64,000 nucleotides of DNA from Pelomyxa schiedti (Eukaryota; Protista; Evosea), in assembly GCA_020536535.1 (NCBI GenBank), contig JAHLWZ010000818.1, positions 1-64,000 on the forward strand. Reading direction: 5' to 3'. The translations under genes and the position numbers were made by a program. Below, in pieces: positions 38,525-40,103 of the stretch. The number at the start of each line of letters is the position of its first letter. The stretch's first letter is position 1. The notes under the pieces were generated by a model. The model saw only the letters and a list, made by a program, of their open reading frames with translations, had not been told where the DNA came from and searched no databases.

Positions 38525-38597
38525 CGATCTTTCTGGGCCTCGAACCCAGGACCTCAAGTTTAGGAAACTTGCGCTCTTCCAACTGAGCTAAAAGACC
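38525..38597 (-). tRNA. tRNA-Arg(CCT)
   Basis: GGTCTTT-TA-GCTC-AGTTGGAA-GAGC-G-CAAGT-TTCCTAA-ACTTG-AGGTC-CTGGG-TTCGAGG-CCCAG-AAAGATC-G: full cloverleaf, followed by oligo-T terminator. Confidence 0.93.
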
Positions 38598-38713: not shown

Positions 38714-38784
38714 TGCACACGCCGAGAATCGAACTCGGGTCTCCCGCGTGGCAGGCGAGAATTATACCCCTAAACCACGTGTGC
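38714..38784 (-). tRNA. tRNA-Gly(GCC)
   Basis: GCACACG..CTCGC-CTGCCAC-GCGGG..CCGAG-TTCGATT-CTCGG-CGTGTGC-A; oligo-T downstream. Confidence 0.95.
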
Positions 38785-39116
38785 TTCACCGTACCACCCC
38801 ATGGCAATATGAATAAGAAGAAGTGTGAATGCTGTTGGTTGGGTCTGATAATAATGATGGAGGGGAGGTTCCACCCAAAAGGGCGGGAGCACGGCGACCA
38901 CATCTAACTAACCTCCCTCACACAGTTGGCAACAACCAGAGAGCTCTAGCTCCTCCTTCTCCTCCTCTTCCTCCTCTTTGCTCTTTGCTCTTTGCTGTGG
39001 TGGTGGTGTTGGTGTTAGGTGCTCACCACTGATAGCCAGCCAACATCTTGATCTGTTGGCAATTATTTTTTTTTTCCCTTCCCTTTTTTTTAAAGGGGGG
39101 GAAAAAAAAAAAAAAA

Positions 39117-39208
39117 TTGGATGAGCTCCGTCAGAGTTGAACCCGAACTCAACAGGGAAGAGAGACCCCCGAAGCTCTGGCTCCAAACCACTGAGCTACT
39201 CATCCAAC
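39117..39208 (-). ncRNA. Putative Pol III small RNA, vault-RNA-like (not a canonical tRNA)
   Basis: GTTGGATGAG-TAGCTCAGTGG(box A)...GGTTCAACTC(box B)-TGACGGAG-CTCATCCAA then a long T run; perfect 9-bp terminal stem; cloverleaf not formable. Confidence 0.65.
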
Positions 39209-39427
39209 GAGATAGACACAGGGCAGGGTATCCAACGCACTCAGTGAATAGGCTAGCTATTATGACACCACACCACCACCGGGCCAGCAAAAACAACTGA
39301 ACTGAGCCAATGTTGATACAACTGATGACCCCACCACCCTACTTGGGTAATAATTAAATGGTATGTCTGGTCTGCTGTTGTCTCTTGTGCCTAGGGTGAG
39401 AAAAAAAAAACACGAGTGAAAAACAAA

Positions 39428-39509
39428 CGACGCCTGCAGGATTTGAACCTGCGCTCCGTAAAGGAACCGCATTAGCAGTGCGGCGGCTTAACCACTCACC
39501 CAAAGCGTC
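39428..39509 (-). tRNA. tRNA-Ser(GCT)
   Basis: GACGCTT..CCGCA-CTGCTAA-TGCGG, long variable arm TTCCTTTACGGAG, GCAGG-TTCAAAT-CCTGC, AGGCGTC-G. Confidence 0.94.
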
Positions 39510-39598
39510 AAAGGAAAATCTTGGCCAGTTTTCCAGTTTTTGTTGTTGTAACTAAGAGGAGGGGAGAAACAAACAACCAACAGCACACCACCAGCCAA

Positions 39599-39723: not shown

Positions 39724-40065
39724 TGTGCTCCACAGTAAGCAAGTCTTGAGGTTTGACACATCCATGGCTAGGTGGTAAACCAAGAGGGGGGGAAAAAAAA
39801 AAAGTCGATCTTTCTGGGCCTCGAACCCAGGACCTCAAGTTTAGNNNNNNNNNNNNNNNNNNNNNNNNNNNNNNNNNNNNNNNNNNNNNNNNNNNNNNNN
39901 NNNNNNNNNNNNNNNNNNNNNNNNNNNNNNNNNNNNNNNNNNNNATTATACCCCTAAACCACGTGTGCTTCACCGTACCACCCCATGGCAATATGAATAA
40001 GAAGAAGTGTGAATGCTGTTGGTTGGGTCTGATAATAATGATGGAGGGGAGGTTCCACCCAAAAG
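39724..40065 (+). repeat. Direct duplicate of 38443-38881 (tRNA-Arg/tRNA-Gly block), interrupted by an assembly gap
   Basis: 39724-39844 matches 38443-38563; 39945-40065 matches 38761-38881; contains partial second copies of tRNA-Arg (3' half) and tRNA-Gly (5' end). Confidence 0.92.
39845..39944. other. Assembly gap (100 N)
   Basis: Run of n; comparison with the first copy implies ~197 real bases. Confidence 0.99.
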
Positions 40066-40103
40066 TGTGGTCGCCGTGCTCCCGCCCTTTTGGGTGGTTG
40101 CCT

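What the first reader, a model, noticed from the sequence alone, without database searches (positions are those of the whole stretch)
39117..39208. Vault-RNA-like Pol III small RNA gene between tRNA-Gly and tRNA-Ser
Seen: the minus strand reads GUUGGAUGAG-UAGCUCAGUGG-UUUGGAGCCAGAGCUUCGGGGGUCUCUCUUCCCUGUUGAGUUCG-GGUUCAACUC-UGACGGAGCUCAUCCAA-U(n), 92 nt. It has a consensus box A at +11, a box B plus a second GUUCG B-like motif, a perfect 9-bp terminal stem (UUGGAUGAG/CUCAUCCAA), further box A-to-3' pairing (UCAG/CUGA, GGUU/AACU) and an immediate oligo-T terminator. It fails as a tRNA: bulged anticodon-like arm, defective T-stem, and extra bases between box B and the acceptor strand. Established: metazoan vault RNAs are ~90-140 nt Pol III RNAs with box A near +10 pairing to the region after box B in a panhandle. 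As I recall, they are known from animals and trypanosomes, while Dictyostelium has vault proteins but no defined vault RNA. Inference: this is an amoebozoan vault RNA or a new tRNA-derived structured RNA.
Basis: partly seen in the sequence, partly recalled or inferred. Interest (0 to 1): 0.88.

Follow-up and report, generated by a model that had tools for sequence, protein, structure and literature searches.

The report
Amoeba tRNA-derived, vault-like small RNA
The amoeba Pelomyxa schiedti has a small gene family, probably evolved from a transfer-RNA gene, whose best-preserved copy encodes a 92-base RNA predicted to fold as a rod; it is a fair but unproven candidate for the vault RNA not yet reported in amoebae.

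Summary
The minus strand at 39117-39208 has a valid box A (+11), a valid box B (+67), a 9-bp Watson-Crick terminal stem and a T15 terminator. It folds as one rod (z about -5), not a cloverleaf. The genome is Pelomyxa schiedti. New here: the gene belongs to a family of eight loci in three subtypes. The subtypes keep both boxes, their spacing, the flanking blocks and an 11-pair potential core, while the centres differ. The genome encodes three full MVPs and one TEP1; no Ro60 was found. The vault identity is not shown. Rfam Vault scores 10.3 bits (cut-off 34). The motif that follows box A in animal vault RNAs is absent. The 3' end matches the vault consensus no better than chance. The terminal stem belongs to one subtype only. 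tRNA remnants are still visible. No transcript or homolog in another species was found. The scan noted similar vault-like Pol III RNAs elsewhere in this genome, including a competing 255-nt candidate. Verdict: a real tRNA-derived Pol III RNA gene family; TEP1/vault ligand about 30%.

The parts
39117..39208 (-). Predicted RNA body, 92 nt before the oligo-U tail; folds as one 37-pair irregular rod. The 5' end is inferred from the stem, not mapped.
39198..39208 (-). 5' strand of the terminal stem (+1 to +11); pairs with 39116-39126
   Evidence: pair probabilities 0.74-1.0
39188..39198 (-). Pol III box A (+11 to +21); 12 of 13 nt at +11 to +23 equal the Rfam Vault consensus at the same numbering
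39178..39187 (-). Block after box A (TTTRGARC), conserved in all three subtypes; remnant of a tRNA D-arm; pairs with box B in the rod
39145..39177 (-). Central hairpin; variable domain, not alignable between subtypes 1 and 2 (P 0.49)
39134..39142 (-). Pol III box B (+67 to +75), valid here; T-to-C mutated in the C671 near copy and the C118 fragment
39119..39133 (-). Conserved 3' block outside the promoter; 13/15 identical to subtype 2 and 11/15 to subtype 3
39102..39116 (-). T15 Pol III terminator
39209..39270 (-). About 60 nt of upstream DNA shared with subtype-1 copies (87% to the C671 near copy, the same as the RNA). It lacks the ACCCATAA element found about 60 nt upstream of U6 and tRNA-Sec genes. 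Either a promoter aid or co-duplicated flank.
39035..39101 (.). Downstream flank shared with subtype-1 copies: T-run/A-run inverted repeat and a short hairpin
39427..39510 (-). Neighbouring tRNA-Ser(GCT)
38714..38784 (-). Neighbouring tRNA-Gly(GCC)
38525..38597 (-). Neighbouring tRNA-Arg(CCT)

Best explanation
A type-2 Pol III gene, derived from a tRNA gene, that makes a non-decoding RNA of about 95 nt working like a vault RNA. Shown: valid boxes A and B, a terminator, a strongly favoured predicted rod, a three-subtype family with conserved ends and a variable centre, and genes for MVP and TEP1 in the genome. Inferred from established Pol III biology: TFIIIC binds the boxes and Pol III starts about 10 nt before box A and stops in the T-run. 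The rod buries the D-arm and T-loop remnants, so RNase P/Z, CCA addition and aminoacylation do not act on it. Inferred with least support: the closed stem and its internal loops bind the TROVE domain of TEP1, the only TROVE protein found, which stabilises the RNA and loads part of it into vaults. Split confidence: maintained Pol III gene about 0.75; TEP1/vault ligand about 0.3.
For: Layout and fold. Family. Three diverged subtypes keep valid A and B boxes and a box-A-start to box-B span of 61-63 nt. Window versus subtype 2: 22 of 25 non-promoter flank positions are identical while the centre is unalignable (binomial P 8e-5 at 50% background). An 11-pair core joining box A and its follower to box B and its follower is kept in 42 of 42 cells, and 11 of 11 in subtype 3 read by eye. 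The tRNA D-stem is broken once in subtype 2 and once in subtype 3 (by eye). Partners: MVP repeats on six contigs, three with the shoulder domain. One TROVE locus, followed by DUF5920, DUF4062, an NTPase, APAF1_C and WD40 repeats, i.e. TEP1. Published description of vault RNAs: 80-150 nt, conservation limited to boxes A and B, panhandle fold, T-run (PMC8824774).
Against: Rfam RF00006 gives 10.3 bits with a wrong local alignment and did not report the locus genome-wide. The TTACTTCG motif after box A is absent. The 3' segment matches the vault consensus at chance level (P 0.72) and below most tRNAs. No two-sided compensatory change among the fetched copies; fold retention in near copies is not significant (P 0.095 and 0.35). 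Subtypes 2 and 3 keep the 3' CATCC but lack its 5' partner, and subtype 2 is not predicted to form the rod (z 0.7). Part of the core pairing is built into any tRNA whose D-stem ends in GAGC. No RNA evidence. Earlier unchecked notes name other vault-like RNAs in this genome, one said to be expressed.
Confidence: 0.32

Rival explanations
1. An expressed, lineage-specific tRNA-derived Pol III RNA with a job unrelated to vaults, like rodent 4.5SI or BC1: for example a decoy for tRNA-binding proteins, a Dicer substrate, or a guide that uses the conserved 3' block.
For: The same family conservation. tRNA remnants are visible: the best global match among 18 held tRNA types is intron-containing tRNA-Ile(UAU), z 5.0, and subtype 3 has a tRNA-like variable loop before box B. 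The 3' block is conserved without its cis partner in subtypes 2 and 3. The genome has other tRNA-like non-tRNA families.
Against: No target or partner was identified. The z of 5.0 is only modestly above the median 3.9 for unrelated tRNA pairs, so the parent tRNA is not established. The layout matches vault RNA well.
Confidence: 0.3
2. Non-functional relics of a tRNA gene, spread by local DNA duplication. The perfect terminal stem arose once by a short inverted copy (template switch), in a region rich in inverted repeats.
For: Three of eight loci are fragments and two have a dead box B. The upstream 60 nt are as conserved as the RNA between near copies, 87% each. The stem is confined to subtype 1. 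No homolog outside the genome. No covariation.
Against: Valid boxes A and B, their spacing, both flanking blocks and a nearby T-run survive in three subtypes whose centres have diverged strongly, which neutral decay does not predict. No tRNA gene carries the same D-arm. The rod is more stable against shuffles than any tRNA span tested.
Confidence: 0.25
3. The DNA matters, not the RNA: the boxes are kept as TFIIIC/Pol III sites that organise chromatin in the tRNA cluster.
For: Promoter boxes are the best-kept part; the window copy sits in a tRNA cluster between two Pol II genes.
Against: The non-promoter 3' block is conserved too, and a 37-pair rod is not needed at DNA level. The C671 copies have no tRNA within 1.5 kb.
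Confidence: 0.08
4. An atypical but functional tRNA (intron-containing, Sec-like or suppressor).
For: D-arm-like and T-loop-like elements; a 9-bp terminal stem as in tRNA-Sec.
Against: Not called by ARAGORN with introns or by Rfam. No intact T-stem. The anticodon-like region differs among subtypes. A true tRNA-Sec exists elsewhere, 67.9 bits.
Confidence: 0.03

Closest known systems
Animal vault RNA (Rfam RF00006)
   Same: Length; type-2 internal promoter; box A starting at +11 with 12/13 identity to the consensus; box B near the 3' end; closed 5'/3' stem with internal loops; segment after box A pairing with box B; T-run; paralogs with variable centres and pseudogenes; MVP and TEP1 present.
   Different: Covariance score far below cut-off; no TTACTTCG motif; 3' sequence unrelated beyond chance; pairing register shifted; D-arm and variable-loop remnants of a tRNA persist; terminal stem not shared by all subtypes; no binding or expression data.
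Trypanosome vault RNA TBsRNA-10
   Same: Pol III RNA in a protist with several MVPs and TEP1 as the only TROVE protein; called on structure rather than sequence (PMC9326685, PMC12547018).
   Different: That RNA was shown to co-precipitate with TEP1 and MVP1 and has candidates across trypanosomatids; nothing comparable is shown here.
Intron-containing tRNA-Ile(UAU) and tRNA-Cys(GCA) of the same genome
   Same: Box A start, D-stem letters, variable-loop-like segment, T-loop; Ile shares a six-letter stretch of the acceptor 3' strand, and Cys shares the ten-letter T-loop stretch (by eye).
   Different: No T-stem, no anticodon arm conserved across subtypes, terminal helix shifted by four positions, rod favoured over the best D-arm fold by 11 kcal/mol.
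tRNA-derived small RNAs and SINEs (rodent 4.5SI, BC1, tRNA-SINEs)
   Same: tRNA-derived A/B promoter; refolding into a rod (own knowledge; the tRNA origin of 4.5SI is also in the abstract of PMC10137851).
   Different: Only eight loci; near copies share upstream and downstream flanks, which points to DNA duplication rather than retroposition; no A-rich tail.
Y RNA / Ro60 RNP
   Same: Closed terminal stem with oligo-U end; partner domain class (TROVE).
   Different: No Ro60 gene found; no Rfam Y RNA hit; internal A/B promoter rather than an upstream one.

Membership tests
vault RNA | Length 80-150 nt ending in a Pol III T-run | tested here: met
   92 nt plus T15 at DNA level; ends not mapped on RNA
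vault RNA | [quoted passage not shown] | tested here: met
   A at +11, B at +67
vault RNA | Panhandle fold joining the 5' and 3' ends | tested here: met
   Predicted for this copy and the C671 near copy; not for subtype 2; no covariation proof
vault RNA | Rfam RF00006 score at or above 34 bits | tested here: not met
   10.3 bits; the model is built on animal sequences
vault RNA | TTACTTCG-type motif right after box A (animals) | tested here: not met
   A tRNA D-arm-like block follows instead (PMC8824774)
vault RNA | 3' segment similar to the family consensus | tested here: not met
   Score 14 against shuffled mean 15, P 0.72
vault RNA | Host encodes MVP and TEP1 | tested here: met
   necessary, not sufficient
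vault RNA | Stable transcript | tested here: inconclusive
   No RNA run held the stretch, but none was listed for the tRNA-Ser in the same query either; public RNA is Smart-seq2
vault RNA | Binds TEP1 and co-purifies with vaults | not testable with these tools
   Needs RIP or vault purification
tRNA | Cloverleaf with intact T-arm, with or without intron | tested here: not met
tRNA-Sec | UCA anticodon, 9/4 fold, RF01852 score | tested here: not met
   Locus not among matches; the true gene is on C1146
Y RNA | Ro60 partner in the genome and RF00019-type stem | tested here: not met
   The single TROVE locus is TEP1; no Y RNA hit at E up to 10
tRNA-derived SINE | Many dispersed copies with unrelated flanks and A-rich tails | tested here: not met
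   Eight loci; near copies share flanks; T-runs follow
Amoebozoan snRNA / Class I-type genes | Upstream DUSE-like element about 60 nt before the start | tested here: not met
   ACCCATAA precedes eight U6 genes and tRNA-Sec but not this gene

The most novel reading that the evidence does not exclude
This is an amoebozoan vault RNA family that was recruited from a tRNA gene within the Pelomyxa lineage. It would catch the tRNA-to-vault-RNA transition while D-arm and variable-loop remnants are still readable. It would imply that TEP1 ligands are re-invented from tRNA genes in different lineages, rather than inherited as one RNA family, which would explain why homology searches miss protist vault RNAs.
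Probability: 0.2. Interest if true: 0.82.

Novelty: new variant of a known kind. Interest (0 to 1): 0.52.

Why it matters
In the papers I could search, vault RNAs are described from animals and trypanosomatids. Dictyostelium vaults contain a TEP1 orthologue (PMC13100048), but I found no report of an amoebozoan vault RNA. TEP1 was recently shown to be an NADase inside vaults (bioRxiv 10.64898/2026.05.01.722283; 10.64898/2026.09.04.749371), and its catalytic glutamate appears to be kept in P. schiedti. A defined amoebozoan ligand would let one test what TEP1 recognises, whether RNA tunes its NADase, and whether vault RNAs descend from tRNAs once or repeatedly. If it is not a vault RNA, it is still an undescribed family of tRNA-derived Pol III genes in a poorly annotated lineage, which is of moderate interest.

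Tried and rejected
Rfam scans at gathering and E-value thresholds gave nothing above noise. RF00006 over the genome gave one 18.1-bit match on C912, with no box B or terminator in the alignment. tRNA-Sec was rejected. An upstream DUSE promoter was rejected. Apparent 3' resemblance to the vault consensus was rejected as chance. Two predicted 5' leaders for subtype 3 (a compensated terminal stem; a normal tRNA acceptor strand) and a more distant partner were all absent. Pattern scans of metagenome, viral and prokaryotic collections found no homolog; the 27 hits were intron-containing tRNAs or unrelated tRNA-like repeats, and the best scored 22 bits on my model. These patterns were written so as not to match the vertebrate vault consensus, and I saw no contig that I took for human. 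Public runs from other samples held only the tRNA-Ser. Kolev 2019 and Poderycki 2005 are not held.

Full report
Observation. The gene is intergenic, in a cluster with tRNA-Ser(GCT), tRNA-Gly(GCC) and tRNA-Arg(CCT) on the same strand. By their open frames the neighbours look like an ABC-transporter gene upstream and a TPR/MYND gene downstream. Box A fits the consensus at +11 and box B at +67. The strand folds as one rod of 37 pairs at -45.3 kcal/mol, z -4.76, with no shuffle as stable. One gene of each of 18 tRNA types from the same genome gives z between 0 and -3.4. A cloverleaf scores -14.4, forcing the D-arm costs 11 kcal/mol, and D-stem pairs have probability near zero. No Rfam family reaches its threshold.

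Organism. The assembly has 52.4 Mb in 5337 contigs. These are the published figures for Pelomyxa schiedti (PMC8887013), an archamoeba sequenced from amplified single cells, with Smart-seq2 RNA. Amplified DNA can make chimeras, so the fragmentary copies below need caution.

Family. DNA search found near copies (subtype 1): a full-length one on C671 with a 4-nt duplication before box A, a 5'-truncated one on C118, and on C1749 one internally deleted copy and one that is almost only upstream flank. They share about 60 nt upstream and 70-110 nt downstream. The upstream block is as conserved as the RNA (87% each), so these are DNA duplications. The C671 and C118 copies have a T-to-C change in box B that breaks the consensus; the window copy is the only subtype-1 gene with both boxes valid. 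A covariance model of these copies then found two diverged subtypes. Subtype 2 lies about 270 nt upstream of the C671 copy. Subtype 3 is a near-identical pair on C577 and C2874. That makes eight loci.

What the family conserves. All three subtypes keep a valid box A and box B, the block after box A, a span of 61-63 nt from the start of box A into box B, a 16-nt block after box B, and a T-run 2-12 nt after that block. The centres of subtypes 1 and 2 cannot be aligned (P 0.49), yet 22 of 25 non-promoter flank positions are identical (binomial P 8e-5 at 50% background, 0.002 at 60%). This uneven pattern argues for selection and against plain decay. An 11-pair core joining the box A side to the box B side is possible in every fetched copy (42 of 42 cells, four one-sided changes) and, by eye, in subtype 3. 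The tRNA D-stem is broken once in subtype 2 and once in subtype 3.

Limits of the structure evidence. There is no two-sided change among fetched copies. Stability retention in near copies is not significant (P 0.095 and 0.35). Part of the core is inherent in tRNA sequences, because a D-stem ending in GAGC is complementary to the start of the T-loop. Subtype 2 is not predicted to fold as a rod (z 0.7); it has a different leader and a possible short stem of its own (pair probability about 0.58).

Origin. No tRNA gene in the genome has this D-arm; the nearest is intron-containing tRNA-Ile(UAU), two mismatches away. That tRNA is also the best global match among 18 held types (z 5.0; unrelated tRNA pairs have median 3.9). 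tRNA-Cys(GCA) shares the box A start and the T-loop stretch by eye. The same D-arm occurs in real tRNAs of other eukaryotes. A tRNA origin is therefore likely, but the parent is not established. It is not tRNA-Sec: the true gene is on C1146. U6 and tRNA-Sec genes carry an upstream ACCCATAA element that this gene lacks, consistent with a purely internal promoter.

Vault context. MVP repeats occur on six contigs, three with the shoulder domain. The only TROVE locus found continues into DUF5920, DUF4062, an NTPase, APAF1_C and many WD40 repeats, and one exon matches human TEP1 (PDB 11gz, E 6.8e-29). By my count of that alignment the glutamate equivalent to catalytic E1008 is kept; this assumes the chain is residues 895-1113 plus one extra. 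TEP1 was read exon by exon only. No Ro60 was found. As in trypanosomes (PMC9326685), TEP1 is the only TROVE protein available.

Vault membership. The layout fits the published description: 80-150 nt, conservation limited to boxes A and B, panhandle, T-run (PMC8824774). Positions +11 to +23 match the Rfam consensus at 12 of 13, at the same numbering; held tRNAs reach 11. But the Rfam model scores 10.3 bits against a cut-off of 34, the TTACTTCG motif is missing, and the 3' segment is no closer to the consensus than shuffles (P 0.72). It should not be filed as a member. 'Works like a vault RNA' remains open.

Expression and relatives. Four runs of the source sample hold nearly the whole 621-nt stretch, which I take to be DNA; no holder was on record as RNA. 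That blank is uninformative, since the tRNA-Ser in the same query had no RNA holder either. Four other runs held only the tRNA-Ser. No homolog turned up in metagenome, viral or prokaryotic collections.

Competing candidates. Earlier notes of this scan, unchecked by me, list other vault-like Pol III RNAs in this genome: a 255-nt RNA said to be expressed, a 109-nt gene near an MVP gene and a 213-nt candidate. Two further notes (98 and 135 letters) may describe members of this family; I could not confirm that. The genome also holds another tandem family of tRNA-like genes. tRNA-derived Pol III genes are thus not rare here, which lowers the weight of layout alone.

Mechanism and verdict. Most likely TFIIIC and Pol III make an RNA of about 95 nt that folds as a rod, escapes tRNA processing and acts as a structured protein ligand, with TEP1 the best single guess. 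The promoter, terminator, predicted fold, family and partner genes are shown; transcription, real fold and binding are inferred. Maintained Pol III gene about 0.75; vault/TEP1 ligand about 0.3; other RNA function 0.3; relic 0.25.

Noticed in passing
G000:C312:29310-29567 and G000:C711:87066-87493: A second family of tRNA-like genes with A and B boxes in tandem at about 170-nt spacing; the arms look irregular and may not form a normal tRNA.
   Followed up: no
G000:C16:141688-141777: tRNA-like gene whose anticodon loop reads TCA but with a short variable region; 23 bits on the tRNA-Sec model. Possible opal suppressor or pseudogene.
   Followed up: no
L052 and L058-L065 upstream regions: Eight U6 genes and the tRNA-Sec gene share ACCCATAA about 60 nt upstream, matching the Dictyostelium upstream sequence element as I recall it; suggests the element is shared with Archamoebae. 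The genome has about 20 U6 copies.
   Followed up: partly
L022:4201-4578 (G000:C807): P. schiedti TEP1 keeps the DUF4062/NADase domain, apparently with the catalytic glutamate.
   Followed up: partly
window 39724-40097: A 100-N scaffold gap flanked by duplicates of the tRNA-Gly leader and the tRNA-Arg 3' half: either a second Gly-Arg pair or an assembly artefact.
   Followed up: no
L004:1740-1920 minus strand (G000:C1749): An ACCCATAA element about 370 nt upstream of the deleted copy; may mark an unannotated snRNA-type gene starting near 1855.
   Followed up: no
L003:1690-1830 minus strand (G000:C118): Upstream of the truncated copy there is a DUSE-like octamer and an Sm-site-like GATTTTTG; possible small RNA gene.
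   Followed up: no
L027-L051: Intron-containing tRNA-Ile(UAU) occurs in more than 20 copies; one copy on C21 has the anticodon changed to TTT on an Ile body.
   Followed up: no
L066, L072-L074, L076, L080, L083, L088, L089 (metagenome contigs): A degenerate tRNA-derived repeat with shared flanks in several metagenome contigs, probably a SINE of an unrelated eukaryote.
   Followed up: no
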